Below, one piece after another: positions 8,216 to 64,000 of a DNA stretch of 64,000 bases. The position numbers were made by a program, and so were the translations under genes. The notes beneath the pieces are model-generated. The model was given only the letters and a program-made list of their open reading frames with translations. It was not told the origin of the DNA and searched no databases. Positions within the stretch are counted from its first letter, which is position 1; each line of letters starts with the position of its first letter. Source of the DNA: Obrimoposthia wandeli (Eukaryota); NCBI GenBank assembly GCA_977020255.1, contig CDROCS010000090.1, forward strand, positions 62,001 through 126,000, in the 5' to 3' direction.

Positions 8216-8239
8216 TTGTGAGAATAGAGCCCACCCGAA

Positions 8240-8465
8240 GGGGCGGGCGGTGGGTGTTGGGCGGTGGGCCGTTGGTGGTTCGCTCCGAGAGGGGGGAAAA
8301 AACTAGGATTTAGTCGTCATCCCAAGGCGCGAGCGTGGTGGGCAGGAAAACTGTGATATAGTCTGCATCCCGAGCCATTGGAGTGAAATTTCACTCCACA
8401 CACATGCACGATTTTAAAGGACAGGTGGGAGGGGGTGTGGATTAGACCAGACCCATCCACCTACT
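8240..8465 (-). repeat. Right terminal inverted repeat of the Polinton-like element
   Basis: Its reverse complement aligns with 2804-3125 except for a missing ~70 bp (the inner palindrome arm plus the small hairpin). Confidence 0.85.
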
Positions 8466-8519
8466 ATATATATGATTTGCTCGTATTCCTCCGCTTCTAC
8501 CGTTGCTTCTGTAGCTCCT

Positions 8520-12592: not shown

Positions 12593-13856
12593 ATGAGTGT
12601 AGTAAGTATTGAGTCCAATGATTCCGAATCATATCAGTGTTCCTTGCTGAATGAAAGTATTAGTTCCTTGCAGTTCGATAAAAGAGTTCGATTTCGGAGC
12701 TATAGTTCTCAATTTACACTCAGCGAACTGGTTATGGTTTCCATTGAACGCCGCGAAGAGTGTCAGCCGATCGATAATAAAATAACCATCGAAGTTGACA
12801 TCTGTACTGCTTTAATTGATGATCAAGTATCACAGTGCAGTGAGAAACCTTTTAATGACGTTGTGCGTTTAGAAGATATGACAAAAAGCAATACATGGAT
12901 TGCGAGGCTCATCAATTATGATTCGTTTGTCGACAAAGATCTGCGTCGAACTGTTCGCGAAGATGCAATGGAGCCGAATAAGCTGTACATGGTGAAAAAC
13001 AGACATTCGTCGAGGACTACAGACAATGTTAGTGTAGAGATCAGTAACCCGGTTCCAGGGCAGCGGAAAATGAAAACGTCGGCGGTTCAATTTACACCTC
13101 GTCACAGTTGTACGACAACAGAATGCGAGGAAGAGGTCAGGAGCCACGTTTCACGGGAGTTATCCAATGACAGCATGAGGAATGAACTGCTCATTCAAAC
13201 TGCCTTTGCTGAGAAAAGCAACATAATTTCGTCGATTGATTTGGACAAAACGAAGAACATCGAATTAAGCAACTTTTCCACTGCACCGAAAGCGAAAGAA
13301 CCGGCCACTGAACATGTGACCGATAAACGTGGAAGACAAATTCCCATAATAGCAGTAGAAATGGACACTCAAAATCAAGGTCAACCTAAAATCCAAGAGA
13401 AAAAGTATGTGGAATCGGACACAATTCCGTACGCCGAAGAAACGGATTTGGAGAGTGACAATGCTGCCTCGTATGCCAAGCGGAACACGTTGTCCAAGTC
13501 TTTGCAGTACTATTTGCCTTTGGCAAGCGGAAATGAACAGGCCAACACGAATCAGCTGACGGTGGAAAAGTCAAAAAGAGAATCTGTTACCACTGACGAA
13601 TGCACCTCATTAGACGAGGACGACGATTCTTCTATAACTCCCGAGTTTCACGGAAACGTTAAATCGGAATTTGATTTCCATGAGGACTTTGATGGCTTCA
13701 GTGACAATTTCAACACAATGCAGTCGCAGGAGTCGAATGGAGAAGAATATGAAGAAGATAAAGTTCCAGAAGAAAATAATGACCAAACACCGACTGCATT
13801 TGATGAAGTGGACGCAAAATTTCCTTCAAACAAGTGGGCGACTTTCCAGTTTACAG
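12593..13856 (+). CDS. Large first coding exon (421 codons + 1 nt), acidic/Ser-rich
   Basis: This is the longest ORF in the window (426 aa to the unspliced stop) and has higher GC than its surroundings. It ends at a strong donor, CAG|GTGAGT. No folded domain was recognised. The start codon may not be the true first exon. Confidence 0.88.
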
Positions 13857-16800: not shown

Positions 16801-19800
16801 TGAAGCGAGTTTGAGTAATAAGTCGTAGATTTATTACATGTAGGCGCTATTTAAATAAAATTTATTGTTATAGATTATCTACTTACATTTTAAAATAATG
16901 CATTCATACAATGTGATCCAAAAGTCTCCGTTTCTTAAAAAATTAACTTTATTTACATGAAATGTACAGTTCAATATCACACTAATACTAATCTTCGAAT
17001 AAAGCCCCATTTAATTTTTAATTTCTCCTTCTAATACTATACTGTCGTTCTTGGTGGTGCTTTGTTGTAGGTGTCAGCAAATAAACGATGACCCTCTTCA
17101 GAACTTTTTCTTCGATTGTGTATTCGTTATTGGCCATATTGCTATTCACACAGTGTCAAAATATTTCCAAATAATCAATAAATGCCTGCACACTGTACAT
17201 TATGTTATATCTTTTTAGTATTTATTCTATGAATACCTAATCAATCATAACAAAGATATAAAACCATAAAGTACAATATCATCATATTACATGAACATGG
17301 AATGTACTATCCATATAAATAAAGTATATTTTTCTAGATACAGAGACTTTTGGATCACAATGTCTGTTAGGTTGGCTGTAACCGTGAAGGGAATCCTTAT
17401 TTTTTCCGACCAAACAATTATTAACATAGATTTGTTATTGTGAATTGTAAGTAGATAATGTATAACAATTTCATATCATAATGTAAAATCTGCCATTGTG
17501 AATGTGGCCTGATATTTCCTATGCTCAGAAGAAGACACAGATCTCGAGGACTCTCAAATTTTCCAGGAGAATCTGGTGATGCACATTTGCAGCTATCCAC
17601 CCATGGAGTGGGCTATTTATGAGACCAAGAGGCCGGCCGACAACATCAGTAGGTGTTTTATATTTAACAAACGTAATTTCAAACAATATGCCTAATTTAC
17701 TACGTTTCTTTATGAGTATTACATTTATGTATAACTTACACTTAGGTTTAACTTTTTAATACTTTTAATATATTACAACATAAAAGTTTAACTGAATACA
17801 AATCATTTATTTATATCAAAGATTGTCGACGATTATCTTAATAATCTAATAATGATTTCTATTTCATGTATTAAAATTTTTTTTTACCAGGGACACAACA
17901 GAACCCCCATTTCTTGATAACACCATTAACAACTTGCAGAACAACTTTTATCGCCAACATTCACGAAGAGGGTTCAGCGTACCAATTCCAGAGATCTGAG
18001 TCCCGAACAATTCTGGCGTGGAGAAGAAGGTACGGGATTTTATTGTCTGATCAGCATCATACAAATCATCGACTTGTTTTTGATCGAACCCATGAAATGT
18101 TTAGGAATTGTCCAAAGAATTTCGAATCACAATTTTTATTGATTAAATAGGAAAATTAATTTCTAGCTCGGAATCTTACACTGATTTCAAATATGCTAAA
18201 CAAGACATTTCTGTAAAAAATAAAATATGGATTCTCAAATTATTAGACATGTGTATATACAATATTAGAGAAACAAAATTTGATTTTTTAAAATGACAAT
18301 AATTGTTCGATTTACGAATTTCTCTTTTGTAGGATGTTTTGGTATCTTCTTTATTTAAAAACTATCAAAATTCCCTCACATTGCCGGATTGCTAGGCAAA
18401 AAATGTGTAGATCATTTTTTTGTTTTAGTGTTGGCGCAATTTTAAAGAAAGTGTATAAATTAAAAATATCTTGTAAGTCTATATTCATTCTGATTATTAT
18501 TTTTTATTATTATATTTATAATAAATTTTATAAAATCTGCCAAACTTTTTAATTTAATCTGGCACGCGAGGGCCGCACTAAATGGCTTCGCGGGCCGGGT
18601 TGTGGCCCGCGGGCCGCCTGTTGCACACCCCTGGTTTAGATGTACCTTCGCATTTTCAGAATTGGCAGTTACATTGTGAAAGTAACACAGACATATGTGA
18701 AAAAGTGCTCTTACTGAAGGATATGTGATACTCTTTGGTTTTATTTCGTATGATGGTTTATCAAATATAACTGTTATTGAAAATAAATATGTCCACATAT
18801 TTGAGAATGATGTTTAGGAACGAAAGGGATAATATAATATGGCAACAAGATAATGCTGGACCTCATAAAGCCTGCAAAGCTTTTGATTATTTCAGATCCA
18901 ACAAGTTAATTCTTCTCCCTTGACATGTATATAGCTACAAGTTATCTATAATAGACAATGTGTGAAAGATTTAAAAAAGATTTGTCTATTACACTTGACT
19001 GTGAATAAAAACTGTTTTGATTAACATTTCAAATGAAAAAAATAAATTAAATTATTATTTTTAAAAATTAGGCTTAAACATTTTAATACAAAGTTTAAAT
19101 TCTAAAACGTTAAGTACGATTATTTGATGTTTAGAAGTGCAAAAAAACTGAATTCTCTAGCTGGAAAAAAAATTGCTTAAAAATGTTTTTTTTTTCAGAG
19201 GTTGGTTCCGATAATTCGGTTACGGTGGAGTACCGGGAACCGGCAAAAATTACGGTGGAGCCCAAATTTGGAAGAGAAATCAAACCCAAGCAAGGTAATT
19301 GATGATTCTGATTTATTATTACGATATCAGTCTTGAGATTAGAAAAACAATCTTTTCTATTTGCTTGTTATTTTTTGTTGGTTCAGCATTTTAATTGTAG
19401 CATTTTAAAATTTTCGGACCTAATATTTGATTGTGGTTTGTTTGCAGTAGTCAGAAAATCGTCTGGATCCCGACCTCAAATTGTTTCTCGATCCAAGTCC
19501 AGAGATAAGAGTCCTGAGAAACCTGGTAAGTTTTCTTCAAAATATTTTCCCCCATTTAAAAGGTTGTGGAATTTAAAAAAATGCTGTTTATCGTCTCTGG
19601 CTTTACTTAGACGGGACATTTACAAAACGTTGAGTCAGATGGCCATTTTCGAATGTACAAAATTAGGCTTCTCTATCAGTCCTTCCCATAATTCAAGACC
19701 TCAGTCCATCGGTGTACCACTGCTCTAATTTACAAAATATTGAAACCAGACATTATAAAATTAATTTTAAGCTAAGCTGTTCTATGCGAAAAGTGAGACT

Positions 19801-22800: not shown

Positions 22801-25800
22801 AGATAATCTTTCTTCGTTCAAGTTCAGGGTTCTGGAGAAGAATGCAATATGTTTATCTTCTTGCACCATGACTCCTGAAAAGGCGGTTTTTGAAGCGTCC
22901 TTTTGAATTTCATTCGGGATATTGAGTTTGATTGGAGATAGTGTGGATGATAAGATTTCCTTTTTCAATTGAGAGAGTGCTGTTTTTGCTGACAGGGGCA
23001 GAGAAAATGTTGCTTCAGAAGAGGTTGGATTTTGTCGGAAAATGATGGTATCCATTTGGCATAATAGCTCAGGAGTCCACGTAGTCTCTGCAATTCCTTT
23101 GCATTGGTTGGTAATGGGTAATCAGTAATAGGTTTTAACCTTTCTGGACCAGGGCGCATTGAATTCTCTTCGATTTGATATCCAAGAAAATTTATGGGCG
23201 TTTTTCGAAGCAAGCATTTATCCATGTTGAGCGAGATTTGGACTTTTTTAACCACTTCAAGGAATTTATTGACGTTTTTGTCATGATCTTCTAGTGATGG
23301 CCCGACGATGATTATGTCACCTAGATAACTGTAGGTGCCTTTGAGATTGTTATCGTCGATAATGTTGTTCATAGTCCGTTGGAAAGCGCTGACGGCATTA
23401 GTAACTCTAAATGGTAGTTTTCTGAACTGATATAAGTTACCGGAGGCTTGGAAAGCCGTGAATATTTTGTCGTATGGGTGCAGAGGTACCTGGTGGTAGG
23501 CTGGTCGCAGGTCCAGTTAGCTAAAGTATTTGTTTTTTGATATTTCTCATCCGAGATTTTGATATTTCCAATGTTTATACTCGGTCTCGGATTTACCTTC
23601 CAGTTTTGGAAAAGTAAAGAGTTTCTCCATCGATGAGTAAAATTTAGTTGAATAAATTGAAGGGAAACTAATAACAAGTTTTATTTAACTAAATTTGAAA
23701 AGTGCTAATATCTAGAAGACTAGATATTTAAACAAAGTTCATCACATTCATCAATAGTATTTCTAAAACTGCCTCCTGTATCCAGTTGTCGTGAGAAGAA
23801 ACAGCAAGCCGCAATCATTGGGACGATCCAGATCTAGAGATCTAAGTCCTGAACAGTTTTGGCGAAATGAACAAGGTATGTACTGGTTTTAGAATTGCAT
23901 TTAGAAAGATGAACATAGTACATCATGCATGATTAAGATAAAATAAATACGAATATGCAGAGTAGCTTTCGAGAAATAGCTCGATATAAAATCTTAATTC
24001 AAACTTTATTTATATTTCTTTCATTCAAAAATAAACAAAAATGTGGAAAAGATATAATATACATTTATAAAGCATCAGAATTTAAATATCATGCAGCATA
24101 CAAAATATCTTTGAAACTTAAACGGGAACTCTTCATAATGCTTATTTTATAAGAAAATCTTCAACATTATTTTAAAAGTATTTATATTCCTAAAATTTCT
24201 TATACAGAGCAATTCCGCTAACCTTACCGATTTAAGAAAGAATTAAAACTTCCAGATACAACATTTATTTAAATGTAGTAAACTTTATATAGGGATGGAA
24301 AAGTTATTTTGCTCTTTAAGCGTTTTGAGTTTTTGAATAAAAATTCTAACAAATTTTCTTAATTATATAAATATACAATAAAAAGTTCATTTTCATTTAA
24401 AAATAAAGAAACTAATAAGAAAAAATATCTTGAAATCTTGTATGAAAATAAACAAACTATAAACCATATTTATTTAAAATCGAAAAGTTTGATAACATTC
24501 CTTTTATTCGTATTTCTTTGCTTAACTGTTTTCTTCTAAATTTTTAATTTGATTTTTTTCCATCAACATTTATGTAATCTGATTTTAATTTACAGAAAGT
24601 CTTCATGATATTAATGTATAAAGATCTTGGTAGCCATTCTAATACACCATCATTATTTTCATTAAATCATGGACAGAGCTGTAATCTTGTACAAGGACAA
24701 TAATTCATGAAATGTAATTTTACTAGTTTCCGTGCATATGTACTGAGTATATCTCTCTGCCCGTGTCGTTCGTATTTACTGCTACCATAAGTCCATGGCA
24801 TAACCATACTCCTGAGCATTAATCTTCAACCACCACAATCACAAAATTTTTTAATTTAAAACTTCGTAGAGCTCCATCTTTTCCTAATAATATAATACAT
24901 CATACAAATACCAATTATCGGGACCGCCCAATTTAAACTTTTTTTCATTCGTATAGGTAACTTTAGACCAGTCCAAATTATTCTCCATCCGAAGTCTTAT
25001 TAACCTTATTCTTCTTACCTCTCATATGCACTCAACAAAATTCCCCGTAGATACTTTCCATACCTCATGTCATTTAGGAAAATTTTATTCAATGTTCTTC
25101 AAGTTTAAGGATTCTACGATTGATCTGCATGTGACTTAAAATCCTTCTAAATTATCTTTCTTTATAAATCGGACAATCCGACTGTTCACCCTTTTTTCTC
25201 TATAGTGTTTCGTTCCTGTTTTCATTTTAATTTGTTTACACACATGCGCATAAATATTTTGCTGTTATTTTAGAAATTTGCAATATTTGACTTTTTTCAG
25301 TATAAGTTTTGCCTTCATCGCGTTGAAATCTAAACAGCGTCAAAATATTATCTTATCTAAAAATAATCATAATTTAATTATTAGCTAAAAAATCTATTTT
25401 AAAATTTAACATTATTTAAAAATTAGAAATAAAGTTATGACAACAAATTAAAACTGATTGGTATTTTAAAATGTAGCCAAATAAAATTAAAATTACATAA
25501 AAGTTTTAAAAAATTCATCACTTTACATGATTTATTATGTATTATAACTAATAAAAGATTCTGAACATGACCATCATTATTCTCCACATAAAGTTGACGT
25601 CGCTTGTAAAAGCTTTGACCATAATTATCTTGTTCATGTCGTCTTTTTTTTAAATCCTCTAATCGTCGTTTTTCTTTTTCACAATTAGTAGATATATAAT
25701 TAGATGCCTTTTTTAAATTTATAAATCTGAGATAATTCATATTGCATTTGTAATTCAGACAAATCTTATGCGGTTTATTTATAAATATCCATAAATATCC

Positions 25801-28800
25801 ACATGCATAAACATAGTATATCTGAGATATTAAAATAGTCATTAATTATGGCTAAAAAATTAAGAACAAAAAGATAGTTTCGATTTATAAATGTTCCCAT
25901 GTTTAAATTGTAAATAGCGATCTTATTTTTTTCAAGATGCTTAAATTTTGACATAAATTTGAATAAACGGTGTTCTTAATTTGTTCCATTAAAAAACGTC
26001 GGGCAATGTCTTAAGCGGGGACTTTGCAGTTATTGAATAAACCATGATTACCAATTCATCTCTTGGGAAGATGTTTCTTTTTCAACCATTGGGGACATCC
26101 TCTTGCATCATTAGTCGATCCCCTGGGTCAGATATTTCTTGAAGATGAAGACTAAAATATGTCTCCAACATAAATGTTAATATTATTATTAAACAAATTT
26201 CAATTACTGACTATTGTAAATGCATAATCTCCGTTTATTATTATTAGTTTGGTTATATGAAGAAATCACAAAGCGCGATTGTTCAAAGGTAGAATGTACG
26301 ACCTGTGAGACTGGTGGCTTCGAAAGTCAAAATAAAACTGGGAAATTCTCGAAATAATTTATTTCCAATTGTACAAATAGTTGACATATATATATATGTG
26401 CAGTCGATTCAGATCACGAAAGAAGTACTTTGGTGCACTGTGTTCCAGAGCCCTTATTAATGTACACGGACGTCGAGAAACCGGACTTCCGTGTGCCACA
26501 GAAAGGTGGGATATGACTTTGTGTGGAGAACTGCCAGACAACATCTGGATTGGTGACCATTTAATTATTAACAAAGTGAAATCCAAACTAGAGTTATATA
26601 TTATTCTGAAGTGTGAAACTTCAGCATTTAACATGGTCAATAATGAGATGTTTGATCTCTGACTGCCAGATGACAATTACCTCATTTTACTCATGGAATA
26701 CAAAACAATACATTTATAATCATTATTACTTATTTAATAATAATTTTAATCGATTCTGTGATTTACACTTTCTAAATCTTTCCTTTTAAATTAAATTTTC
26801 TTCATTTACAAAATCCATCGAATTCGCTTCAGAATGTAACATAAATGACTCTTTTTTTCCAGCTGAACCAAAAGTCGAGTCTGGTACGGAAGACACCAGT
26901 TTGTCTTCCTCAGAAGCCGAGGAAGAAGTAAAAGAAGGTAATTATTTTCCAAATAAAATAACATAATATTTTAAAAGAATATTGGTCAAGATTCAGCTAC
27001 TTGTACCTTACTCTGGGGCATTAAATTAATTCTTTAAATTGAATGCGTTGATATTTCTGAAGGTTGATACTTGATAACAATTCACTGTACGATCTCGATT
27101 TGTTTGTTTTTGAATCGCTTAGTAACGTAGCATTAAAACAATATGATGATGTATGAATTTTACTAATTCGATCTATTTAAATCTCTACTTATGTGTTTGG
27201 GGAGCTAATAATTTAACATTGCACTGACTCCATGTGACACGATGAATTGTATTAAAGAAATATTATGAAAATTCATTTATTTTTGTTGGAGAGCTGGATT
27301 TAACGATATTGTTGCGTCTTGTCAGGAGAAGACTCTGTTAACACTGGATCCAGCAGTTTCAAATGGGAAATGTTGATGAAAGCGACAAAAGGCGCATTGG
27401 TAATCCATCACCAGAAGTTGAAGAAGAAATCAAATTGCTTTCGAGCACGAGCTGTCACATAGCAAGTCGGAATTAGCAAATGAGATGGATGAAAAATCTG
27501 CGCAAAGCTTATATAAAAACATCTTAAATGCTAATCATTAAATAAAGAGAATAGCCTTCACAAAAGAACATCAAAAAGTAAGAAAAATTGCACCAAAGAT
27601 TGGTTCAAACGCTTCTTGAATTTTAAATCAATTATTAATTCAGCTGAGGCTCAATTTTCATTAGTTGCACCTGATTATTCTCTTTCGTGGGAGCTAGACA
27701 ATGAAGGTAAATGTAGTTTTAGAATTAGTCGAGCATTTTATGGCGGTTCAGATTTGGTACGTGGATTCGCTATCTCTAATAGAAAGTTTCATGTTGAAAT
27801 AATTGATAGTACATTTAGACATTGTCATTTATTTAGAAATAATATGCTGCCCAATTTTACAGTCAGTAAATGTCAGATTTATGCAAGATAATGCAAGACG
27901 ATATACTCGCTTAAAAGCTAAAAAGATGTTTATCAAAGAAAATATTCGAGTTTTGAAGCGGCCTTCACATAACTCAGATTTATATATTATAGAGAATATG
28001 TGAAAGATTTTTAAGGTTTCTATATATATTTGTGTGTCATTTAAATATAATATTACTTTTCATTCCTTTATTCACAATATAATTCTTTAAAATTGTACTT
28101 TTTTGAAATTTCCAATTGTTTATCTAACTTATAAAATATGAAAATATAAATGTAATGAATTAACGCAATCACTTTAATATTAATCTGGATATGTTCTAAA
28201 CAACGGTTAAAATTTTAAAAAATCTTGAAAAATTCAAACATATTCCTTTTTTTATTCATTTATTCTTTATGCATGTTATCGTTCTAAAATAACTACATCT
28301 ACTACAACTTAATCCAAGTCCTGGTGTATAGGAGCTTCTATAAATATATTATTTTGACAATATCTAGGAAATTCTCTTTTATTAAATTATAAGGTCGTAT
28401 CAAACATTTCCCCAAATTTGACTGAAATCTCATAGGACTTTGATTGAATTTAATTTTTTTGTTTTAACTTTTCAATAATTTAAGAAGGATATTTCAAAAT
28501 TTTGTTAATAATTATAAAAAAATTATATTATTTTATTATTTTCAAAAATTCCGCAAAAGAAGGAAAATAGAAGAGGAGTATCGGAATAATGTTAAACACA
28601 GTATTGGTAATTCAAATGATTGTATTAGCGGAAAAGGTTGATTAAAAATACTTTAATGTAAATTGTTTTAATCTTTACAAATTATTAGAATAATAAAGTT
28701 TTTGATTCATGGTATAATCCTATTTTAGATGTATACTTTGTCCATCTTAGTGAGTATTAACAAATATCATATTCATTTCCAATTTTATGCTGATGACCCA

Positions 28801-49800: not shown

Positions 49801-52800
49801 CAAAAACTTTCATTCTTCAGCTTCTTTTTATCCGCGTCTGGATCGTCAAGAGAAGTTCATGAAATCTTCCAAGAAGTCGGCCTCTTTACCGAAATTGTCT
49901 CGAGGTGAGATTGTGTGTGGGGTGAGCCTAGATGATGTTTTGGTTTAGGGAAACATGATGAATCCACCTCCAGTTGGTCAACATCTGACACCGACTCCAA
50001 GGTGAAAAAGGGTAAGTATTAGAGTGAATTTATTCTAAAGTATTATGTAATAAATATAAAATTGTAAATGCGTTAGTAACCTAGGCCGGGAATTAAATCA
50101 CGCGATTTACTTCTTGCAATTCGTGCATTCTATCGCGGTTCGTAATTTCTCCCAACTAATAATTTTTGAATTTGGATTATGCGCTCTCAATTTATAAGTA
50201 AATAATTTTTTTCAACAAAAAAACTCAGACATTTTACAAATCACAGAGCCCTTTAAATTGATACTTTCATGTTTTCTCTATTTAAGTGATAGCAGATACT
50301 AAAAGCCTGGCAACATCTACGTCGTAGCTTTCGAACAATATAATATTGTATAAATTTAATCAATTGATCTCTAATAATGTTTTTGGAAAGGTAATATTTT
50401 AAATTTATGTAAGAAAATTATTTTGAGAGTATTTTGTAAATATGAAGAAGATTTCTGAGTTTACTTTGATAGTTTCCCTTGATAGTTTTAAAGTTAACAA
50501 ATACACGTTAAAAATGCAAAAATTAATTAGCATACACTTCCATTGATTTTTCCCACATTCAGGAGCTTTAAAGAGTCCGGAGAAAATAAAAATCATTTCA
50601 AAGCAACAAGAAGCAAAATTGCCTCAAAGTGAGTATAATATCAGATTGTGCTTTACGGTGACGTGACTCTCTTCCTGCAGTTTCTAGATCAAGTACAATA
50701 ACAAATTCAGCAAAGTCCTCAAAATCTGGCTCTCCGAAGAATCAAGGTTAGTTTAGGTTTTGAACTCAATATTTAGTCTTAATTTATACGGTCAAATTTA
50801 TCCGTGTATTAAACTCATTTCAGTCGTGAGTCGTGTTGCTGACCAGTAGCATTGACGAGGGCTGCAATATACAGGATTGCACAAAAAGTTTAAAAAAATA
50901 TATTTGAAATATATGAAAATATTATATAATCAACAAACATAACTTACAGAAATTTTACTTTAAAAGAATTGTGTTAAATCGGGGCCAACTAATTTGTAGG
51001 AAACGAAATTTAATTTAATTTTATAGTTATTTTAAATAATTTTATAGTTAGATATGGATTCACTTAATATATCATCTGCTGTTGCCTCCAAAAATGTGAA
51101 ATCAAAATATCGCTGAACTTGACAATATTTTAAGCCAATATAAAAAATTTGTAAATAAGCTATTTAAATATTTTAAAATAATTAATTCCCTGATAATGCC
51201 TGTTGTACTAAAATATGATTTCGTGAAGAAAATTATTGTAAAATAGCTTGTGATAAAGTGTATTTTTTTTAAAATTGTTATTTTAAAATCCTTAAACAAA
51301 TTTAATACGAAACCTAGAGGGACATAATTGGTATGAACTGGCGATGTGGAACAATTTATTTGCAAAATATTTTAAATTTCGGTATAAAACTGACTTTCTA
51401 AAATTTATATAATTACTACGTAACAACGTCTTCGTCACCATCGCTTGCAACGCTATTGGCGTGGGGTCTACTTCTGTCAAATATTTTGATTTTATTATAT
51501 ATTTTGTCGCATCAAATCAATATTTTTAAAACTAAACTAAAAAAAATTAAATTTAAATATAATTTCTTAATGCTCAGACGCTCCGAAAAAAGCAGCTCTT
51601 GGCGCCCATGAATCCGACTCTTCGACAACATCAGCCAGTGCTGCTGACACCAAAAAGAGAGGTAATGCTGCATAGACTTCTCCACATAATCCAACGGGTC
51701 ATTTAAACCAATCAGTTGATCCCACCTCAATTATACCCATTGACTGTTTTCACTTTTAAATAGAACACATACTAAATTAATTTAAAACCTTTATTTTTAT
51801 TCAAAATATAATCCATTGTGTTCAATACTTTTCTGCCTACGCCTAGCTAATTTTAAAATACCTTCTTTATACCACCATAATAATAATATAATATTACTCA
51901 TTTATAGAGCTAGTATTCAAATCTGAATACATTTCCACTACATCAACAGTATGTTTTAAAGAAATAAACTGTGTTACAGATGGGACAAATATTTACCGTT
52001 TCTTTAACCCAAAAAATCTGTGAATCTTTCAGTTTTTAGATACCCTTTTCTGAGAGTTTATAAGAATCTATGTTAATGAAATGAAATTTTTAAAGGTTGG
52101 CATTTTGAATTAGATATTGGAATTTATCATTATTTTATCTATTTAAGATTGTCAGTAGATACCTTTTTCGAAATATTTTATTTACTAGGTATTGTAGGTA
52201 TAAATTTAATTATTATGTGTTGATTATTATTTGATCTTCATAAAATGAAGAGTTACTTCTTAATGGATGAAAAAGCTATTTAAATTTTATTTTATTTTCT
52301 TAATTAAACCGTTTCTTTCTTATCCTATCAGGCATATCTGGAACTGAAAGAAGTGAGATGGACCTTGAAGAACAAAGTCATAAATATCTGAAGAACATTA
52401 AAAAGAGTGAAGGTAAATTTGTTATCTCATATTACTTTACCGACATGGACAATTTAACGATTGCTGACAGATTTAAGGTCACACCTAATTTTTGAAAACT
52501 TTAATCAATCTTTAGCTTTTCATTTTTAACTTATTATTTATATAATATGTAATTACTGAATTACAAGTAGTATGTCAGTAACCGATTATGTAATGAATTT
52601 AAAAAGACTTTTTTAACGAATTTATTTAAATATCATTATTGGGATGTAGAAAAACAAATGTGATTGCTGATTCCTTTTCTCTCTTTTCCTTTATCTGTAG
52701 TCAAAAGCACTCTGATGTAGGTTATACTGACAAATACCTTTAGCCAGTTGAGGATAAGTATTATTTATATATACCCTTCTAAAAAGTGAGGGGTTGCTTT

Positions 52801-55800
52801 TGAAGTGGTGATTTGCCTCTATAAAGTACATCACAAGTTCCTTTTCCGCTGGTGTTTCGTATGTTTCATTAGTTAACTTTCACGTAGGAAATTGAAAAGC
52901 GGCTTCGTTTTACAGCAATAACTCTCTGCACTTCGACTTCCTCGGACGGTAGAGCTATTTTATTCATCTCATTTGTAACAGTGTCACGGACCTTTACTTT
53001 GATATTATTTCCCAGAAATAATAGATTGGTCTACCGTGAACCTAAGAGCTTCTCGTTCATTACATTAAATTGAAATTCAATATTCCCTGAAGGTTATGTC
53101 TTAAGTTTGCAAGAGTTTGGATGAGTAACCTCCGCCATTTTGGAATTTTTATTCATTGCAAAATGATTGGATAAACCGATGAGATAGAGGCATAGTTGTT
53201 TTCTCCCCATTGGTCGGTAATTCTTACAATTTCACTGACATGAGCAGTCCGGTTTTCCAGCGCGTCTCGAATAGCCAGCTGAAGTATATGATCCATATTT
53301 CGCTCCAACGGTCTAATTTAGAGAATTGTCCATATTGGCCACGGTGTCATGAATACAGCAAAAGCAGATTCATCAATGCAGTTTCCCACAATTGATAGAA
53401 AACACATAATATGCCTGTCCGTCGACCCGTCACTCTCATAGACTTTTGATTTTGAAATATCTGAAATAGCCTGATTTTTTTATTTCGTATTCCAGCATAA
53501 GATGTATGGGCTTAGTTTGGTGACGAGGAGGCTTCGAATACCCTATCCTGTGACAGATAATGGCTGTGCATCAGATTCTACACCAAATTAAGTGTTAAAC
53601 CAGTTTAATAAAAGCAGTGAAAAGAGAACAATTTCATTCCATTTGATATTTATGTAATAAACGTTATACACATTTCTAAAATTTTCACATAACTTTTATC
53701 GGCCTTCCTGTGTAAAGTGAAAAATATAGGATGATAGAAAATGTTTAAATAAAATTAGTTAACTTTGGAAAAATGAAATATTTCATTAACTAAATTTGTT
53801 ATAAATCTCCCCTATTTGAGAATTATTGTATTATTGAATAAAAAATATTGTAAAACTTTGAAATTTAAATTAAATTAAAAAATTTCTAAAAACGCCCGAG
53901 GCTACATGTTAAATGGAAAAACATTTTATAAAACAATCTTACAAATATAATTAACTAATTATAAATTGCAAATCCATGACACGAAATAAATACCTTCTTC
54001 ATTTATATCAAAATGCTATATAAAAATCTTGATGGCTCACTAAGTCATAGGATGGTTTTGATATTTAATTATCTATGTGATAACAAATTCAAAGTTAATT
54101 TCAATTTATATTTTTTATTTGAATTTCTTTATAATTATAAAATTAGTAGTATATAAATTAGGACAAAACATAGAAATATTATGAATAGCTAATTGTATTT
54201 TAATGTATTCAGAATTTTAAAATATTACGATAAACTTTGTTAAAATAAAAAAATAAATTGGCACTTTGATAACAAAAATATTTAATTATAGATTTTATTT
54301 ATACATGTTAGATTATAGATTTTTTTTCTGAAAATTCTAAAATATCTGATTTTCAATATTAAATTATAGATTCCTAAATGTATTTAAAATGAATTTTATC
54401 CAAAGAAATTTTTAATATTTTCAATAAAATAAATATATTAATAATAAGACATTTTAAGCGTTTCGTTTGTTTACAACACAAACATATTTGGAACTCGCAC
54501 GGAAAAGCCTTGGGTGAGTATAATTTATCACCATTATGTATCTTTTTACAAAACTTCATTCAATTGTGAGCGTTCAAGTTGGAAGCCTTCGTCAGGATCG
54601 TCCGATAAAAATATTATACATATATATATAAAATTTACTATTTTAAGTGAAACAATACCTTGCTTGTTACTGAATTTTCCAATGGAATTTTAACCACATT
54701 TTCCCATTTTCAGATGACCATTCATCAGATTCGTCATCGTCTTCCTCTTCCTCGTCTGACAAAAATTCCGAAACCTCTCAAACCGAATCTATAGTGATTG
54801 AAAACAAAGCATATCAAAGTAGAAATAATATACTCTTTCTACTAATATATTTTTGTCAATATAGAGTCACTGGTTTCCGACGAAGAAATAAATATTAATG
54901 AGTATAGAAGGCTTCAGAAAGAAAACGCTGCACGAGGTTCGATAACTTAAATTTGAGAAGTTTCTAGTCACTTCATTAAACTGTTTTCATTTTGAATTTA
55001 AGATAAGCATCCTGACATTTTATAATGAAAAATAAGTGCCACTTGTTTGTTGAAATTCTCGTACTGTATTTCTCCATGGATAAGCCTACCCCTCAAAATC
55101 AAAAGACGGAATATGACTCACAGCTTCACGGTGTGTATTAATTATAAATAATTGTTCTGTTGTATTTAACTGTAGTTCCGTAAATTTTCAAATTATTAAA
55201 AACTTTATTCGGTTTGAAGTATATTCAAGTAAATTTCGGTGTACATTGTTTAAAATCGAAATATTTCAGTTTCATTTCATTATATTCTAACAAAATTAAT
55301 AGCATATTTTACATTAAAACATTTTGCTTTGATTTATTTCATTACCGTGAAGATATAAGTCGAGATAACATAACTGATAATTTATGACAAGGGAACCCTA
55401 TCAACTGAAAGACTGATTGGGAATTGAAGATACTGATTTTGAAATTGTCGACAACTTTTTGTATAATTAATATTGTCAATAATTTTGTTTGTTCATTTCA
55501 ATAAATTGGATTATAGCTTTGACACTTGAATACCTGGTACAGCTTTGAGAAACGTATACAAACCTGAATGAATGTAATATTACTTCAAAGAAAATGTTAC
55601 TAGATTGAATTGAAAAAGTTACATAAAACTAAGATAATATTTGAAATTACTAAGAGAAAGTTGAAACTTTAGTTTATTCGTTGTGTGATTTCCACATAAA
55701 GGGGTATTGGACATTTTAATTAGCTATACATGTACTTATTTAGAGTCATCAAGCAGTACAGACGATGAGTCCAGAGTGACTTCTTTGTCGAGCTGCCACA

Positions 55801-58800
55801 GTACCGATACGCATGGTAAGTTTCGACCTTCAAATTACCGTGTAAAATCCGATAAAAAATGACAAATTTTTATCAATTCTTTCTGAAAAGAAAAAACTCA
55901 ATTTATTCAAGTTATGAAAGACATGGATTTTCGTTCAAGACTACAAGATGAAAACAAAGAAAATTCGGCAATAATTAGACTTTTTCAAATAGTTTTTCAC
56001 CAATTTTCTTTTAAATTTATTTACCAAATACAGTGTAAGTTCCCATTCTGACACATATAACCTTTTTAAAAATAGCATTACGAAACTGTTTGATTCACAT
56101 GTTAGCATAAATATTAATTCGTATTTTCTAATGCAATATTTTTTATTTAGAAGTTAAGAAATATAAAATGGAAATCGAAAGAGTTGAAGAATTTGAAAAA
56201 CTCAAAGTGTCTCCTACATCGTTGCACAGAACGCCAGGTTAGCATATATACTTTTCAGATATCTTTAATATGAATGTGTAAAATATTATTTTCATTTAAA
56301 CTAATCATTTCCAACTTTTTATGCCAAATTTCAAAGCATTCTAAATTGATTTAAACGGATTTTTTTACAAACTTTTTAGAGATTAAGCATAAGAAATTTC
56401 AAGGAAAACATTTTGAATTTAAAAATAATAAAATTTTAGTCAATAATGTTAATGTTTAAAAGTTTTATTTATTTTCTCAAATAAAAAGAAAATTTGTTCG
56501 ACTTTCAATTAAAATTTTGGCAATTACATTTAAAATACTCTCAAAATGTAATGATAAAAACGAAAATAAAAATTGTGAAGTTCTTTTGGCTACTCTTTTA
56601 CTCGAATTAAGCAAACTCAATCATCGTTACATTCTAGTTTTATATTCTTATTATAAAATAAGATTTAACCAACTAATCGTCTATTATCTTCAGCACCAGC
56701 GGACTCTTCTTCTAGCTCCAGCTCAGAATCTTCACCTGCTGAAGATGGTTGTAGTAATAGTAATCATCCACTCCGAGCAAGTGAGCAGTAATTCCCAATT
56801 TCCGTATTTAGATTCTTAAATGGCACCACAAACTAAAAATCTAATAAATGAATACTCAGATTAATTGGAGAATGTAGGTCTTTTTACATTTAAGATTTTA
56901 TTGATGAAATTATTAAAAGGTGAAATTATTCTACAAATTAGATAATTAGGCCATATTTAAAAACTTAACAGAAAAGTTACAATTTTTAGTTATTGCAGAA
57001 CTTCATTTAAATATATTTCATACCTCCAGGCCTTACAAAGCAAGTGACACTCGATAACATATTCATCGGTGAACTGAGTGATGACTCAAAGAAGAGATTA
57101 AGTTAGTAAATTATAAAATAGTCTAATTTGAGACTCGTATTCAGAATCTTCGGATAGTTCATCTTCAAAAGACAATACAAAGGAAAATAGAGGTAAAATA
57201 TTTTTTTTTATATTTACAAATATTTATATTTACACTATAAAAACATGACATAAATAGGTCTTAATTATATTTGTCTTAGATTGAATAACCTTCACATGAA
57301 AAGTGAATACACATCCGATACATTTTTGGCAAAATTATACACATGTAATTTTTAAACCCTAACCAAACTTATCAATTTAAAAACTGGATTTAAGAATATT
57401 AACTTTGTGTATTAAGTTTTTGCAAAATTAATGCATGTTTCATTTAAAATTATATAAAGCACTATAAAAGCAATATTAAGAATTTATTTTATTTCGTAAT
57501 AATTTTTATAAAAAAATGTTTCTGTGTAAATAGAATATATTATAAACAAGAGATTTTTTCATATTAAAGCATGTAACTTTCAAACATGTAAGAAATCCGG
57601 AATTGTATATTAACAATTTTTTTAAAACGTTTTTAAACTATTTATTTTCGAATTTTATTAATATTTTATGCTTCTGTAAGTTATTTGTAATTTTCAAATA
57701 GATTGTCAGGCCTATCATTGAATATTCAGGAATCAGAATTAACTCAAGATTTTCATCATAAATCTATTAATTTTTTATTAGTTACAATTAAAATGTGCGT
57801 TAATGGATTGACAACTGACAGAAAGCCAGTTGACACCGATTAACCCCTAATTTAGTTTTTTGATAAATGGATCAAGACATTGCCCCATAAAATTATCAAC
57901 AAACAATTACACATAAATTTAATTTAAAAAGAATTTGTGTTAATGGATTGACAACTGACACCGATTAACATATAGTTTAATGATAAATAGTACAAGATAT
58001 GATCCATAAAAATATAAACTTAATCTTCGGTTTATTAAATAAAATTAAGAAACATAGAATATACTATATAATTTCATTACTCATCATATTTCTAGAATAA
58101 AATTTTATAAATAATTAAACAAAAAATTGCATAATTTTTACAATTTTATATATTTTTTATTAATTAACTGATATTTCGTGAAAATTGTATAAAATTAATA
58201 ACGAAAAGAAAAGTATTTATTTTTAAATATATCTAATTGTTTATTTACATTGATATTAATTAATGAATAATTGCCGTATAATTCGAAATTTGAAGATTAG
58301 ATTACTATGATATTTATTTATTCATAATTTCATATAAACACTTATTCTACTGCCAAAACATATTGAAAATGATTACAGATTTTTAATTTAAAAAATCGTA
58401 TAAATTTAATAGCCGAATTTGAAATTTTAATATTTTAATATTTTGCTATTTTAATTTAAATTGATCTAAAAATAACATTAAAAAGATTTTTCACATTTCA
58501 AAATGTTTATAAATAAATATGTATGTCGTAAAGTCAACTGTTGGGTCAAATAGAAAATTTCCATACAATGACTCGTGGTAATCAATTTAATTTTGATCAT
58601 ATCTTCATCAAATGTAGGCATGTTCTATTTACGGCATATTTTCCAGCCGGGACTTTAAAAATATTTCACTGAGTAAAAAGACTAATTGAACTGAAAATTG
58701 GAAAGAAAGTTGTGATCGATGTCGGTTCAACATTTCCAATGTTTCATTCACAAATATTAATTCCTTCCGGAGATATTTTCACACAAAGCTGGAACGACCA

Positions 58801-61800
58801 GTAAAAAATCGATCACAACTGGCTTGCAAATTTTCAATTCAATCGGAGTATTTTACTCAGTGGAGAAAAAAATTGAATCCCGGCTGGAAAATATGATGTT
58901 TCTATTTCTAACTTTCTTTTAAGAAGATTGCTGTAAAGAATATTTGTCCAGTACTATCCTTTACAACCAAATTCAATATCTTTGCTCAGAATCCCAACCC
59001 GGTGAAATTAGGCTAGATCAGGTGCAGTTTTCACACAAATGTCCGGAAACAGGTAAACATTGAAATATAGAGTGCAATTAATTGTCAATGCATATAATTA
59101 ATTATCTTATTGATGAATAAATAAAATATTTTTTCAACCATGGACCACAAATTACATCCAAAAATAGTTATTCGATCATCAAAAATATTGTATTATAAAA
59201 ATAACAGTCAAAACTTGTTACTATATAGAAAATGCATTTATTAAATATTTGTAGTAATCAATAACTTCATTAGCTTTGATGCTTATTGCACAAAAATGAA
59301 CAGTCAATATTAATAATCTGGTTTAGTCTCAACCCTTGCTATTTATCTCCATTTTGCTTCCTTAATTTGTGAATAAATCTCCTATTATAGAAAACCATGC
59401 TACTACTAGCCCAGTAGTTGGAATAGAAATGATGCTTTCTTCAACTAAATCATAATCCAATGGATTTGTTCATTTAATTTGAATATATCTAAACACGCCG
59501 TCATTTTGAACTCTTCTTGCTTCTTAACTTTAAATTTCCCTTCAAATTTTATAGTCCTGAGCAACCTCCGAGTTTATATCATCTCTGGTTCAAAATTTTA
59601 TAAATCTTCAAACCAAGAAAGATAAGGTGTATTGATAATTTCTGAAATCTCTGCTGGAAAACTTTATTAAAACCATCCAATTGTTAGATACTATCAATCA
59701 AATTTCCTTACTTAAAATAGACAATTTTAAAAATAGTACTATTTTAAAACATTCTTAGGCAAAGATAATCAAAATTTACTACATCTTAAAATTAAAAATA
59801 ATTTTCAAATCCAAAATCATATCACAAATTTCTCACAAGAATACATAAGAAATACAGATTATATTAATTATCTCAATATTGATCTGTCAACCTAATTTAT
59901 TTTTCGAACAAATATCTGTCATCTTCATCAATTCAATTTGAAATGGCTGGTTCAAATATAATTTTAAATAAAAATAAAATAATTACTAGAAAATTTGCAG
60001 ATATTTGAAAATTAGATAAACATTATGTTAATGTTTTTATATAATCGTCATTTTAATATATTATATTTTTAATTTTAATTTATTTTAAATAATTTTAAAA
60101 CAGATAAACTCAATGTTAATGGAAGATTGAAATCAAATGAGCAGTTTAATGAATAATATTGAAAATAATAACGAAATAGTCTGATTTGTAAATTGTTCCT
60201 CTTATTTTTTCCTGAGTTAAGGAAATAAAGAAAATTTGTAAATGGACTTTAGAAAAAAGTTAAAAAGCTCATTTACTAGGGGGAAAATTAGTTATAAAGG
60301 TTCTAGAATTCGACCCATAATTGCTTTTCATTTGGAGCACAGTTAGTGATCTGTAAGAGTTATCCATGGGAAATAGACTTTGTAGTAACAAAATAGAGGG
60401 GCCACTAACGTATACAAAAAGAGTTAGTCTTTAAGTAAGGTTTTGGTAAGATTTTCAATTTCGAATGAAAATAATTTTGGAATTATTCAAGTAATCCGAA
60501 AACAAAATATTTTTAATTGATGGAACTGTTGTCGAATCAAATGAATTGTTCCTGAGTAGAGCCATCTTGACTATGTCTTTGCTTTCCAGAGTCCTCCGAA
60601 CATTCGGATTCCGATTCCGGCATCAGGCCATCTCTCCAGAAACCGGTTTTGAGGGCTGTTGACAATCAGTACTCAAATCCTCCTGGCAACGGTTGGTACA
60701 GTTGGCCCCCTCTCCTTGCTTTCCGCACTCAACTTTGATGGGAATTCATTCTCCAGGTCAACTATTGATTTGGTAAAAACCCCCACAAATTGCTAATTTT
60801 CAATGTAAACTGTTTTTAGTTTTTTTAAAAAACCGTTTCATGAAGGAGAAAAAATAGAGTAGATTAGAATTGTTCTTTTTCAATACCCACATTTTATCTA
60901 AACATAACTCTAAGGATTATAGGTAGTACAGGATAATAACTCTAAAGGTAGAGATTTAAAAATGTAATGAATCAAAAAATAAAGAACGAATTTTAAAAAC
61001 AATTTTATTTATATATCAAACTTTACATATAACATTGGCTTTTCTTTATTTATAGAATTCTATATGTTTTCCATTTTCTTCAATTACACAATGAAGACAA
61101 CCGTGAAAATTCTCAAAAACATCAGAAATCAATTTTTTGGTTTACTAACTGAAAAGCTTCTTTGATATTTTCCTTGAGTTCCAGCATCCTATCTAACTTA
61201 ATATCATATACTCATATTCAAATAAAACTGTGCCTCATCTGAAAAGGGAATTGCCTTTAAATGGTTGATATCTTCAGATGTTCTTACAATTACTGTTATT
61301 GCAAATTCGATTCAATGGATGATATTTCAGGGTATTGAGACATTTCCACACAGTTTCCCGACTGACACCAGTGGCGGATCACCAATAAATTGATTTTCAA
61401 TATCATCTAATGACTCACCTGAAATATTTGGTTTTTCGTTGTTCCTTTTGACACATCTAAAACACTTCCTGTTGTCATAAGCCTATTATGCCACTTCTTA
61501 ATATTTCTTTCATAAGGACATTGCACATTTTACCATACACATATCTATGTTTTCTTTGAACTGAAACAACACTTCCAACATTTTCATACCAAGCTGCACA
61601 TTTGGCTCTTTGCTCAATTGAATAAGATATTTTCTAAAAGGTAATATTAAATAGTAATCATAATACTTACTGATATTTGATACAGAGAAACAAAATAATT
61701 TAACCTTCGATAAACATTTTATAGCTAAAATAAATCTCTATTTTTAGAATTGTCACCATGTATATTCAATTAAACGCAGTCATTGTAAGCATAAGATGAG

Positions 61801-63989: not shown

Positions 63990-64000
63990 GTAACAACAGC

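What the first reader, a model, noticed from the sequence alone, without database searches (positions are those of the whole stretch)
12593..63989. Giant gene built entirely from symmetric phase-1 cassette exons
All 45 small exons I could resolve (48-180 nt, mostly 63-105 nt) have lengths divisible by 3 and are phase 1-1. Any subset could therefore be skipped without a frameshift, giving a combinatorially tunable disordered polypeptide of at least ~1,740 aa that alternates basic spacer modules with poly-Ser modules. This architecture recalls titin PEVK or triadin-type cassette regions, but I recognise no known protein and no folded domain. The six-frame ORF track misses almost all of it. It may be an undescribed lineage-specific scaffold, elastic or phospho-sponge protein. 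Caveat: I used phase consistency to choose among nearby splice sites, which biases the count.
Basis: partly seen in the sequence, partly recalled or inferred. Interest (0 to 1): 0.85.

Follow-up and report, generated by a model that had tools for sequence, protein, structure and literature searches.

The report
Serine-rich disordered gene of in-frame exons
This animal DNA holds a real but apparently family-less gene of about 40 small exons that all keep the same reading phase and encode a floppy, serine-rich protein, a design already known from elastin and some nucleolar proteins; no RNA data could be reached to show how it is spliced.

Summary
After a 1,264-nt first coding exon (12593-13856, ending in phase 1) I model 40 small + strand exons of 48-180 nt. 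All have lengths divisible by 3 and all are phase 1-1. Together they give 1,616 aa without a stop, 21% Ser.

- Picking the locally best acceptor and donor blind to phase still gives 33 of 40 lengths divisible by 3.
- A chain limited to 1-1 exons scores 273 bits, against 32 (0-0), 20 (2-2) and 5 on the minus strand.

RNA evidence was unreachable, because all the runs found are genomic DNA. Coding is instead supported by:
- exon GC 0.46 against intron GC 0.28;
- poly-Ser tracts written with all six Ser codons;
- dN/dS of about 0.26 between paralogous exons whose introns have fully diverged.

The core (40.8-56.8 kb) is about 12 tandem copies of a two-exon module: a basic exon (motif EKF..SSKK.ASLPKLSR), a 39-58-nt mini-intron, then a poly-Ser exon.

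No homologue, Pfam domain or confident fold was found.

Uniform phase is best explained by tandem exon duplication, a known principle seen in tropoelastin, treacle/Nopp140 and titin PEVK. Combinatorial skipping is possible but untested. I class this as a new member of a known kind, of modest interest.

The parts
12593..13856 (+). Exon 1: ATG start, 421 codons plus 1 base, acidic Ser/Glu/Asp-rich; ends in phase 1 at ACAG|GTGAGT
   Evidence: No Pfam hit (5, 52), no PDB hit (53), no homologue in 1.84 billion representatives (17). AF2 pLDDT 34 (28).
12680..12694 (+). KRVRF, an RVxF-type (PP1-docking-like) short motif at residues 30-34; a lead only
   Evidence: Read directly from the translation. 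About 7% chance expectation by my own rough estimate.
17529..17648 (+). Exon 2 (120 nt, 1-1). An alternative donor at 17652 would give phase 2.
   Evidence: 15 bits
17940..18029 (+). Exon 3 (90 nt) with the SRDLSPEQFWR motif
   Evidence: The motif is shared with exon 23786, and all differences within it are synonymous.
19199..19294 (+). Exon 4 (96 nt)
   Evidence: 15 bits; strong splice sites
19448..19525 (+). Exon 5 (78 nt), basic RS-like; tentative
23786..23875 (+). Exon 6 (90 nt), paralogue of exon 3; lies just outside the intronic LTR element
26404..26505 (+). Exon 7 (102 nt); tentative (acceptor not top-ranked; a minus-strand ORF overlaps it)
26863..26937 (+). Exon 8 (75 nt), acidic
33955..34077 (+). 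Exon 9 (123 nt); tentative
37792..37884 (+). Exon 10 (93 nt); tentative
38215..38361 (+). Exon 11 (147 nt)
39551..39673 (+). Exon 12 (123 nt), acidic
   Evidence: 20 bits
39952..40035 (+). Exon 13 (84 nt)
40849..41077 (+). Module 1: exon 40849-40923, 58-nt intron, poly-Ser exon 40982-41077
41730..41843 (+). Module 2, fused into one exon (114 nt) with no mini-intron
43279..43485 (+). Module 3: basic exon 43279-43368, 42-nt intron, poly-Ser exon 43411-43485
43527..43732 (+). Module 4: basic exon 43527-43613, 41-nt intron, poly-Ser exon 43655-43732
45710..45889 (+). Module 5, fused into one exon (180 nt)
46396..46605 (+). Module 6: basic exon 46396-46479 (…EKFVDSSKKTASLPKLSR), 39-nt intron, Ser/acidic exon 46519-46605
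   Evidence: dN/dS about 0.26 against module 9
48243..48452 (+). Module 7: exon 48243-48335, 45-nt stop-free in-frame intron, exon 48381-48452
49116..49319 (+). Module 8: basic exon 49116-49202, 42-nt stop-free in-frame intron, poly-Ser exon 49245-49319
49821..50011 (+). Module 9: basic exon 49821-49904, 44-nt intron, Ser/acidic exon 49949-50011
50563..50746 (+). Module 10: exon 50563-50628, 52-nt intron, exon 50681-50746; tentative (low coding score)
51578..51661 (+). Module 11, short fused exon (84 nt)
52332..52412 (+). Exon (81 nt); tentative
54714..54818 (+). Poly-Ser/acidic exon (105 nt); weak donor
55744..55815 (+). Ser/acidic exon (72 nt)
56151..56237 (+). Basic exon of module 12 (87 nt; …VEEFEKLKVSPTSLHR)
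56694..56780 (+). Poly-Ser exon of module 12 (87 nt); here the intron between the two exons is 456 nt
57145..57192 (+). Exon (48 nt); tentative
58990..59052 (+). Exon (63 nt); tentative
60590..60691 (+). Exon (102 nt)
   Evidence: 12.5 bits
63927..63989 (+). Last exon visible (63 nt); its donor sits at 63990, so the gene runs off the window

Best explanation
This is a single-copy, protein-coding host gene on the + strand. It may be more than one transcription unit, which cannot be told without RNA.

The product is at least about 1,600 aa long, hydrophilic and 21% Ser. It has an acidic 421-aa N-terminal part and a basic, poly-Ser-studded tail, and is probably intrinsically disordered.

The gene grew by repeated tandem duplication of a module of about 55 aa and two exons: a basic exon carrying the motif EKF..SSKK.ASLPKLSR, a 39-58-nt mini-intron, and a Ser-run exon that often starts with SRSS. 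Only phase-symmetric units can be duplicated in tandem without breaking the frame. The all-1-1 pattern is therefore a legacy and a condition of that history, not in itself a sign of cassette splicing.

Inferred mechanism (not shown): the protein is an intracellular multisite phosphoprotein. Basophilic kinases (R/K-x-x-S sites at the exon junctions) would prime the Ser runs. Kinases of the CK1 type (pS-x-x-S) and CK2 type (S-x-x-D/E) would then fill them. Each module would switch from basic to strongly acidic, giving a scaffold or condensate former like Nopp140/treacle. The conserved basic motif would act as a repeated docking or priming site.

My odds:
- real coding gene: about 0.9
- origin by tandem module duplication: about 0.85
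- phospho-switch scaffold function: about 0.4
For: Phase and length statistics.

Open 1,616-codon chain, and exon GC 0.46 against intron GC 0.28.

Poly-Ser runs use all six Ser codons (TCT 21, TCA 16, TCC 14, TCG 14, AGT 7, AGC 6). TRF reports no tandem repeat in them. So they are not slippage microsatellites.

Purifying selection between paralogous exons:
- 46396 against 49821: dS 0.66, dN 0.17.
- The SRDLSPEQFWR core in exons 17940 and 23786 differs only at synonymous positions.
- The flanking introns are at random-level identity.

About 12 alignable modules share the intron position, and 3 of them have lost the mini-intron.

In the 45.7-51.7 kb stretch that was laid, the exons lie in single-copy depth bins and the high-copy repeats lie only in predicted introns. 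An independent contig is colinear with 0 differences.

Composition and charge: the tail has pI 9.1, 28 S-x-x-[DE] sites and 20 R-x-x-S sites.

Literature:
- Genes of disordered proteins tend to be built of symmetric exons by internal tandem duplication (PMC3632108).
- In vertebrate Nopp140 and treacle, adjacent exons encode repeating basic/acidic-Ser motifs, and in Nopp140 the serines are phosphorylated by CK2 (10.1101/513978).
Against: - There is no transcript evidence of any kind. All runs found are genomic DNA.
- About 13 exons are weakly supported.
- It is not shown that exon 1 and the module array belong to one mRNA.
- Several Ser runs lack nearby acidic residues, so CK2 alone would not explain them.
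- No localisation signal or partner can be named.
- The 3' end, and any folded C-terminal domain, lies outside the window.
- The disorder call rests on composition and on a single-sequence AF2 model of exon 1 only.
Confidence: 0.55

Rival explanations
1. Cassette-exon reading: the symmetric exons are used combinatorially. Regulated skipping would produce many isoforms of tunable length and charge, as in tropoelastin or titin PEVK.
For: All 820 possible exon-exon joins keep the frame and create no stop. Two mini-introns (42 nt at 49203-49244 and 45 nt at 48336-48380) are stop-free multiples of 3, so they could also be retained in frame. In tropoelastin the same 1:1 design goes with extensive alternative splicing (10.1101/2024.12.03.626628). 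[quoted passage not shown]
Against: There is no RNA evidence. Frame compatibility follows automatically from a tandem-duplication origin. The absence of T at exon ends follows from the donor consensus (G or A at position -1). Most splice sites look strong rather than weak.
Confidence: 0.25
2. Secreted structural, adhesive or biomineral phosphoprotein. It would be a self-coacervating polyampholyte with poly-phosphoserine and basic blocks, like the marine-worm cement or shell-matrix Ser-rich proteins that I recall from memory. Its signal peptide would lie in an exon I did not find.
For: There are long Ser runs next to basic blocks. The source looks like a marine animal, judging from notes of Vibrionaceae and Moritella contigs in the same assembly. 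An acceptor upstream of the ATG cannot be excluded.
Against: Exon 1 starts at a good ATG (AAAATGA) 51 nt after an in-frame stop. It has no hydrophobic N-terminus or transmembrane stretch. Cys, Gly and Tyr are low.
Confidence: 0.1
3. Two or more genes: exon 1 with a few following exons is one gene, and the module array at 38-57 kb (and beyond) is another. The 'giant gene' would then be a chain artefact.
For: Exon density and composition change sharply. There are 13 mixed or acidic exons in 27 kb, with introns up to 7 kb that hold an LTR element. About 25 exons then follow in 17 kb. Phase agreement between the two parts has a 1-in-3 chance of arising anyway.
Against: All parts are on the same strand and in the same phase, with no stop anywhere in the chain. 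A codon model trained on exon 1 alone picks out the distal exons. No internal ATG-initiated first exon or terminal exon is evident.
Confidence: 0.2
4. Not a gene: chance open stretches and Ser-coding microsatellites in repeat-rich DNA.
For: No transcripts and no homologues were found.
Against: The 1-1 chain scores 273 bits on the + strand against 5 on the - strand. Phase-blind site choice gives 33 of 40 lengths divisible by 3. Ser codons are mixed. dN/dS is well below 1 while the introns have diverged fully. The exons are single-copy.
Confidence: 0.03

Closest known systems
Tropoelastin (ELN) gene architecture
   Same: - All exon borders are in phase 1:1.
- Exons are small and multiples of 3, and two module classes alternate.
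- The product is low-complexity and disordered.
- There are internally replicated regions with unusually short introns.
- The design allows cassette-like removal of exons without a frameshift (10.1101/2024.12.03.626628; here).
   Different: - The composition differs. Elastin has hydrophobic G/V/P exons and KA/KP cross-linking exons. This gene has basic EKF..SLPKLSR exons and poly-Ser exons, with only 2.4% Gly.
- Elastin is secreted through a signal peptide and is known only from vertebrates.
- There is no sequence similarity.
- Alternative splicing is documented for elastin and untested here.
Nopp140 (NOLC1) and treacle (TCOF1)
   Same: Both have a long central region of repeated basic plus Ser-rich/acidic motifs. 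In vertebrates the repeats are encoded by adjacent exons, and in Nopp140 the serines are heavily phosphorylated by CK2 (10.1101/513978). The treacle domain is over-represented in symmetric disordered exons (PMC3632108).
   Different: - No LisH motif was found in the first coding exon.
- The basic blocks carry a different motif and are not K/A/P-rich.
- Many Ser runs here are pure poly-Ser without D/E.
- The conserved C-terminal SRP40 domain could not be looked for, because it would lie beyond the window.
Titin PEVK and triadin/junctin-type exon arrays
   Same: Arrays of short symmetric exons that encode disordered modules (PMC3632108 lists the PPAK motif and the Asp-beta-hydroxylase N-terminal region among symmetric disordered exons).
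   Different: - The composition is not rich in P, E, V and K.
- No PPAK or other Pfam match was found.
- No transmembrane anchor is visible.
- Nothing suggests an elastic role.
KNL1-type kinetochore scaffold (recalled from memory; a lead only)
   Same: An N-terminal RVxF-like motif (KRVRF, residues 30-34) is followed by a long disordered array of rapidly evolving repeated phospho-modules.
   Different: - There is no MELT-like repeat consensus; only one MEIT occurs in the model.
- No SILK motif is present.
- The C-terminal RWD domains cannot be tested.
- As far as I recall, the repeats of human KNL1 lie in one large exon.

Membership tests
Symmetric-exon genes for disordered proteins built by internal tandem duplication (Schad et al. 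2013, PMC3632108) | Runs of successive exons of one symmetric phase class | tested here: met
   All 40 small exons in the model are 1-1. 32 of 39 are 1-1 in the phase-free chain.
Symmetric-exon genes for disordered proteins built by internal tandem duplication (Schad et al. 2013, PMC3632108) | Sequence similarity between successive exons or modules | tested here: met
   About 12 alignable two-exon modules, and the exon 3 / exon 6 pair.
Symmetric-exon genes for disordered proteins built by internal tandem duplication (Schad et al. 2013, PMC3632108) | The encoded protein is mostly disordered | tested here: inconclusive
   GRAVY -1.08, 21% Ser, no Pfam hit, and AF2 pLDDT 34 for exon 1 alone in single-sequence mode. 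No disorder predictor was run on the spliced protein.
Nopp140 / treacle | N-terminal LisH motif encoded by exon 1 | tested here: not met
   Pfam scan of exon 1 at E up to 10 gave no family. This assumes that 12593 is the true start.
Nopp140 / treacle | Central array of alternating basic and acidic, Ser-rich repeats | tested here: inconclusive
   Basic/poly-Ser alternation is present at 40.8-56.8 kb. However, many Ser blocks lack D/E and the basic blocks are not K/A/P-rich.
Nopp140 / treacle | Conserved C-terminal domain (SRP40_C) | not testable with these tools
   The gene runs off the window at 63989.
Tropoelastin | All exon borders in phase 1:1 | tested here: met
Tropoelastin | Alternating hydrophobic (G/V/P/A) and Lys-Ala/Lys-Pro cross-linking domains, plus a signal peptide | tested here: not met
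   Gly 2.4%, Val 4.8%, Ser 21%. The N-terminus MSVVSIESNDSES is not hydrophobic.
Titin PEVK | PPAK / poly-E motifs and a composition dominated by P, E, V and K | tested here: not met
   No Pfam PPAK match on the 10 largest exons. P 5.4% and V 4.8%.
KNL1 | N-terminal RVxF PP1-docking motif | tested here: met
   KRVRF at residues 30-34. The motif is degenerate and its function is untested.
KNL1 | Array of MELT-type repeats | tested here: not met
   The module consensus is EKF..SSKK.ASLPKLSR plus a Ser run.
KNL1 | C-terminal coiled coil and RWD domains | not testable with these tools
   These would lie beyond the window.

The most novel reading that the evidence does not exclude
This would be a lineage-specific giant polyampholyte with three properties:
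- Its 40 or more symmetric exons, and at least two in-frame retainable mini-introns, are really used combinatorially, as in elastin.
- Its modules flip from basic to acidic on hierarchical Ser-run phosphorylation.
- A PP1 phosphatase docked at the N-terminal KRVRF motif resets them.

That would make it a new family of splice-tunable, phospho-switchable scaffold or condensate proteins.
Probability: 0.12. Interest if true: 0.55.

Novelty: new member of a known kind. Interest (0 to 1): 0.3.

Why it matters
If transcribed as modelled, this is a clean non-vertebrate example of how a long disordered protein is assembled by tandem duplication of a phase-symmetric unit. The unit here is two exons that keep a conserved 39-58-nt mini-intron, which three copies have lost.

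The locus offers a natural series for studying intron loss, the limits of mini-intron splicing, and how selection acts on short motifs (EKF..SLPKLSR, SRDLSPEQFWR) inside otherwise fast-evolving low-complexity sequence.

It is also a warning for annotation, since ORF-based tracks miss all but one exon.

It does not open a new class of system. The design principle is established for elastin, treacle/Nopp140, titin PEVK and others.

Tried and rejected
**RNA evidence.** Both run searches returned only runs of one sample. Those runs hold 96-100% of the words of a 5.9-kb stretch that includes introns. Laying them on 45700-51690 gave colinear genomic contigs, flat depth and no splice joints. They are therefore DNA runs and neither support nor refute splicing.

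**Homology and fold for exon 1 (421 aa).**
- Exhaustive HMMER search of 1.84 billion representatives: 0 hits.
- Pfam at E up to 10: nothing.
- PDB sequences: nothing.
- ESM Atlas: only sub-threshold hits of 0.79 or less, to assorted disordered eukaryotic proteins.
- AF2 single sequence: pLDDT 34, no domain.

**Pfam on the 10 longest small exons.** Only sub-threshold low-complexity hits.

**The spliced 1,616-aa protein.** It could not be submitted to any database tool. It has no reference form, and I did not type long sequences.

**Source organism.** A search with the intronic integrase found only anonymous ENA proteins at 49-62% identity. Earlier scan notes say only 'this animal', with marine bacterial contigs in the same assembly.

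**Rfam on the whole window.** Nothing at gathering score.

**Rejected readings.**
- Microsatellite origin of the Ser runs (mixed codons).
- Exons derived from transposable elements (single-copy depth).
- Candidate exons at 22460-23400 in the first chain lie antisense inside the LTR element and were dropped.
- Other GC islands (39105-39397, 53228-53443, 18561-18648) show no frame compatible with the gene.

Full report
**Setting**

The window is AT-rich eukaryotic DNA, about 25-41% GC in 2-kb bins. A six-frame ORF list shows only one long + strand ORF inside the finding, at 12593..13873. Notes from the same scan describe the source as an animal whose assembly also holds marine bacterial contigs and many Polinton elements. 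I could not name the species.

**Exon 1**

The ORF starts at an ATG in an AAAATGA context, 51 nt after an in-frame stop. A strong donor, ACAG|GTGAGT, lies 15 nt before its stop, so the exon is 12593-13856: 1,264 nt, ending in phase 1. Its 421 residues are acidic and rich in Ser, Glu and Asp.

The searches on exon 1 gave the following:
- no Pfam match, even at E up to 10;
- no PDB relative;
- no hit at E up to 0.001 among 1.84 billion representative proteins;
- only sub-threshold look-alikes in the ESM Atlas;
- a single-sequence AlphaFold model with mean pLDDT 34.

The one thing I noticed in it is KRVRF at residues 30-34, an RVxF-type PP1-docking pattern. The pattern is degenerate, so I treat it as a lead only.

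**Is the exon pattern real?**

I tested it in ways that do not use phase to choose sites.

1. All AG..GT pairs of 36-300 nt that are open in some frame and hydrophilic were counted. On the + strand 42 are phase (1,1) and no other class exceeds 28. On the - strand 3 are (1,1).
2. A codon log-odds model was trained on exon 1 alone. Of the 20 non-overlapping + strand candidates scoring 10 bits or more, 14 are (1,1). Four are (1,2), mostly variants of the same exons with a weaker donor. The 13 such candidates on the - strand are spread over eight of the nine phase classes, and none is (1,1).
3. A dynamic-programming chain starting from the exon-1 donor, with the intronic LTR element masked, gave these scores:

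| Chain | Score (bits) | Exons |
|---|---|---|
| + strand, any phase | 281 | 39 (32 are 1-1) |
| + strand, 1-1 only | 273 | 36 |
| + strand, 0-0 only | 32 | 8 |
| + strand, 2-2 only | 20 | 9 |
| - strand, any phase | 78 | 22 |
| - strand, 1-1 only | 5.4 | 3 |

4. For each of my 40 small exons I took the locally best-scoring acceptor and donor within +/-25 nt, blind to frame. 33 of 40 lengths are divisible by 3, where about 13 are expected. 31 of 40 pairs are exactly the model's sites.

**The model**

My curated model has 41 exons. It totals 4,849 nt and 1,616 codons, with no stop, including at split codons. About 27 exons are well supported and about 13 are tentative; these are listed under parts.

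No exon ends in T. None of the 820 possible exon-exon joins would therefore create a stop, so skipping any subset is arithmetically possible. This follows from the donor consensus, which has G or A at position -1, and needs no special selection.

**Is it coding?**

Transcript evidence could not be obtained. Both run searches returned runs of a single sample that hold 96-100% of a 5.9-kb stretch, introns included. Laid on 45700-51690, they give colinear genomic contigs: one of 5,213 nt has 0 differences at depth about 47. Depth is flat across exons and introns, and there are no splice joints. These are DNA runs. They do confirm the assembly. They also show that, in the stretch laid, the exons are single-copy, while the high-copy repeats (46.9-47.1, 47.7-48.1, 49.5-49.7, 50.3-50.5 and 51.1-51.3 kb) all fall in predicted introns.

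Coding is supported by other evidence:
- Exon GC is 0.46 against intron GC 0.28, and 37 of 40 small exons lie in a local GC island.
- The eight Ser runs of 6-14 residues use all six Ser codons, from both the TCN and AGY families, well mixed. Tandem Repeats Finder reports no repeat there. They are not slippage products.
- Paralogous exons show purifying selection. Exons 46396-46479 and 49821-49904 differ with dS 0.66 and dN 0.17.
- Exons 17940-18029 and 23786-23875 share the motif SRDLSPEQFWR. All five differences in its ten complete codons (RDLSPEQFWR) are synonymous.
- The introns flanking these exons are no more alike than random intronic DNA, 0.57-0.68 against a baseline of 0.61.

**Anatomy**

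Exons 2-13 (17.5-40 kb) are sparse, of mixed or acidic composition, and separated by introns up to 7 kb. One of those introns holds a truncated Gypsy-type LTR element on the minus strand.

From 40.8 to 56.8 kb the gene is an array of about 12 diverged copies of one module. Each module has three parts:
- a basic exon of about 84-90 nt, with consensus ..P.LDR.EKF..SSKK.ASLPKLSR;
- a mini-intron of 39-58 nt, usually GTGAGATT...TTAG;
- a Ser-run exon of about 63-96 nt, which begins SRSS in five copies (GRS in one more) and ends in Lys.

Three modules (41730, 45710, 51578) are single fused exons without the mini-intron. In the last module the intron is 456 nt.

The intron length distribution is bimodal: nine introns of 39-58 nt, and all the others 153-7,017 nt. 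Seven of the nine mini-introns contain in-frame stops, so they must be removed. Two are stop-free multiples of 3 (42 and 45 nt) and could be retained in frame. Unchecked first-reader notes on other pieces of this genome also mention introns of 39-40 nt. This fits the pattern, but I did not test it.

**How it most likely works**

What is shown:
- a long open chain of phase 1-1 exons;
- a tandem-duplicated module;
- selection on the encoded motifs.

What is inferred:
- The phase uniformity is the trace and the precondition of tandem exon duplication. This is the general pattern described for genes of disordered proteins (PMC3632108).
- The protein has pI 6.35 overall and 9.1 for the tail, GRAVY -1.08 and 21% Ser.
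- Its tail carries 20 R-x-x-S and 28 S-x-x-[DE] sites.
- I read it as an intracellular multisite phosphoprotein. Its basic/Ser modules would become acidic on hierarchical phosphorylation, making a charge-switch scaffold that works like Nopp140/treacle.
- I give this functional reading about 0.4.

**Comparison with known systems**

In gene design, tropoelastin is the closest. All its borders are in phase 1:1, two exon classes alternate, replicated regions have short introns, and cassette-like splicing occurs (10.1101/2024.12.03.626628). Composition, secretion and taxon all differ.

In protein logic, Nopp140 and treacle are the closest. They have repeated basic plus Ser/acidic motifs encoded by adjacent exons, and Nopp140's serines are phosphorylated by CK2 (10.1101/513978). 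However, the LisH motif that defines their exon 1 is absent here, and the C-terminus cannot be seen.

The titin PEVK and triadin comparisons hold only for the 'array of symmetric small exons'. A KNL1-like reading fails for lack of MELT-type repeats.

I therefore do not file the gene in any of these families. It is a new, apparently lineage-restricted member of the known kind 'disordered protein gene built of symmetric exons by tandem duplication'.

**Verdict**

- Combinatorial splicing is untested, and the elastic role has no support.
- Novelty of the principle is low, and the gene itself is an orphan.
- Interest 0.3.

Noticed in passing
window 2796-8473: A 5.7-kb element bounded by terminal inverted repeats of about 280 nt (arms 2796-3071 and 8265-8473, 85-89% complementary). 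It has a perfect-type sub-terminal palindrome at 2834-2923 and an internal G/T-rich satellite at 7831-8207 (20/30-nt period, about 18 copies). No long ORF with a Pfam match was seen.
   Followed up: partly
window 8766-9610: Two adjacent + strand ORFs (110 and 169 aa) contain the motif ILAGDTDSFF, which is like motif C of protein-primed B-family DNA polymerases. This is probably a Polinton/Maverick pPolB fragment lying outside the TIR element. There was no Pfam hit at E up to 0.01.
   Followed up: partly
window 21410-23749 (minus strand): A truncated Gypsy-type LTR retroelement lies inside an intron of the gene. It has RVT_1 and rve integrase matches and broken ORFs. It is flanked by 100-nt direct repeats that are 95% identical (21410-21509 and 23650-23749). 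Exon 23786-23875 begins only 37 nt beyond it.
   Followed up: partly
window 44164-44756: A perfect (100% identical) tandem duplication of a 296-nt unit inside an intron. It is either a very recent duplication or an assembly artefact.
   Followed up: no
window 18561-18648: An isolated 88-nt island of about 75% GC in 28%-GC intronic DNA, with a GGCCCGCGGGCC palindrome. It looks like the conserved core of an interspersed repeat or a small structured element. There is no Rfam match.
   Followed up: no
window 46900-47099, 47700-48099, 49500-49699, 50300-50499, 51100-51299: Intronic segments with 5- to 55-fold the single-copy contig depth in the DNA runs. They are short high-copy interspersed repeats (MITE- or SINE-like), and none overlaps a predicted exon.
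   Followed up: partly
window 48336-48380 and 49203-49244: Two of the nine mini-introns are stop-free and 45 and 42 nt long. Retaining them would insert 15 and 14 residues in frame, so they are exitron-like candidates.
   Followed up: no
window 1712-1761: A first-stage note reports a type I hammerhead ribozyme here. Rfam at gathering threshold found nothing anywhere in the window. I did not look further.
   Followed up: no
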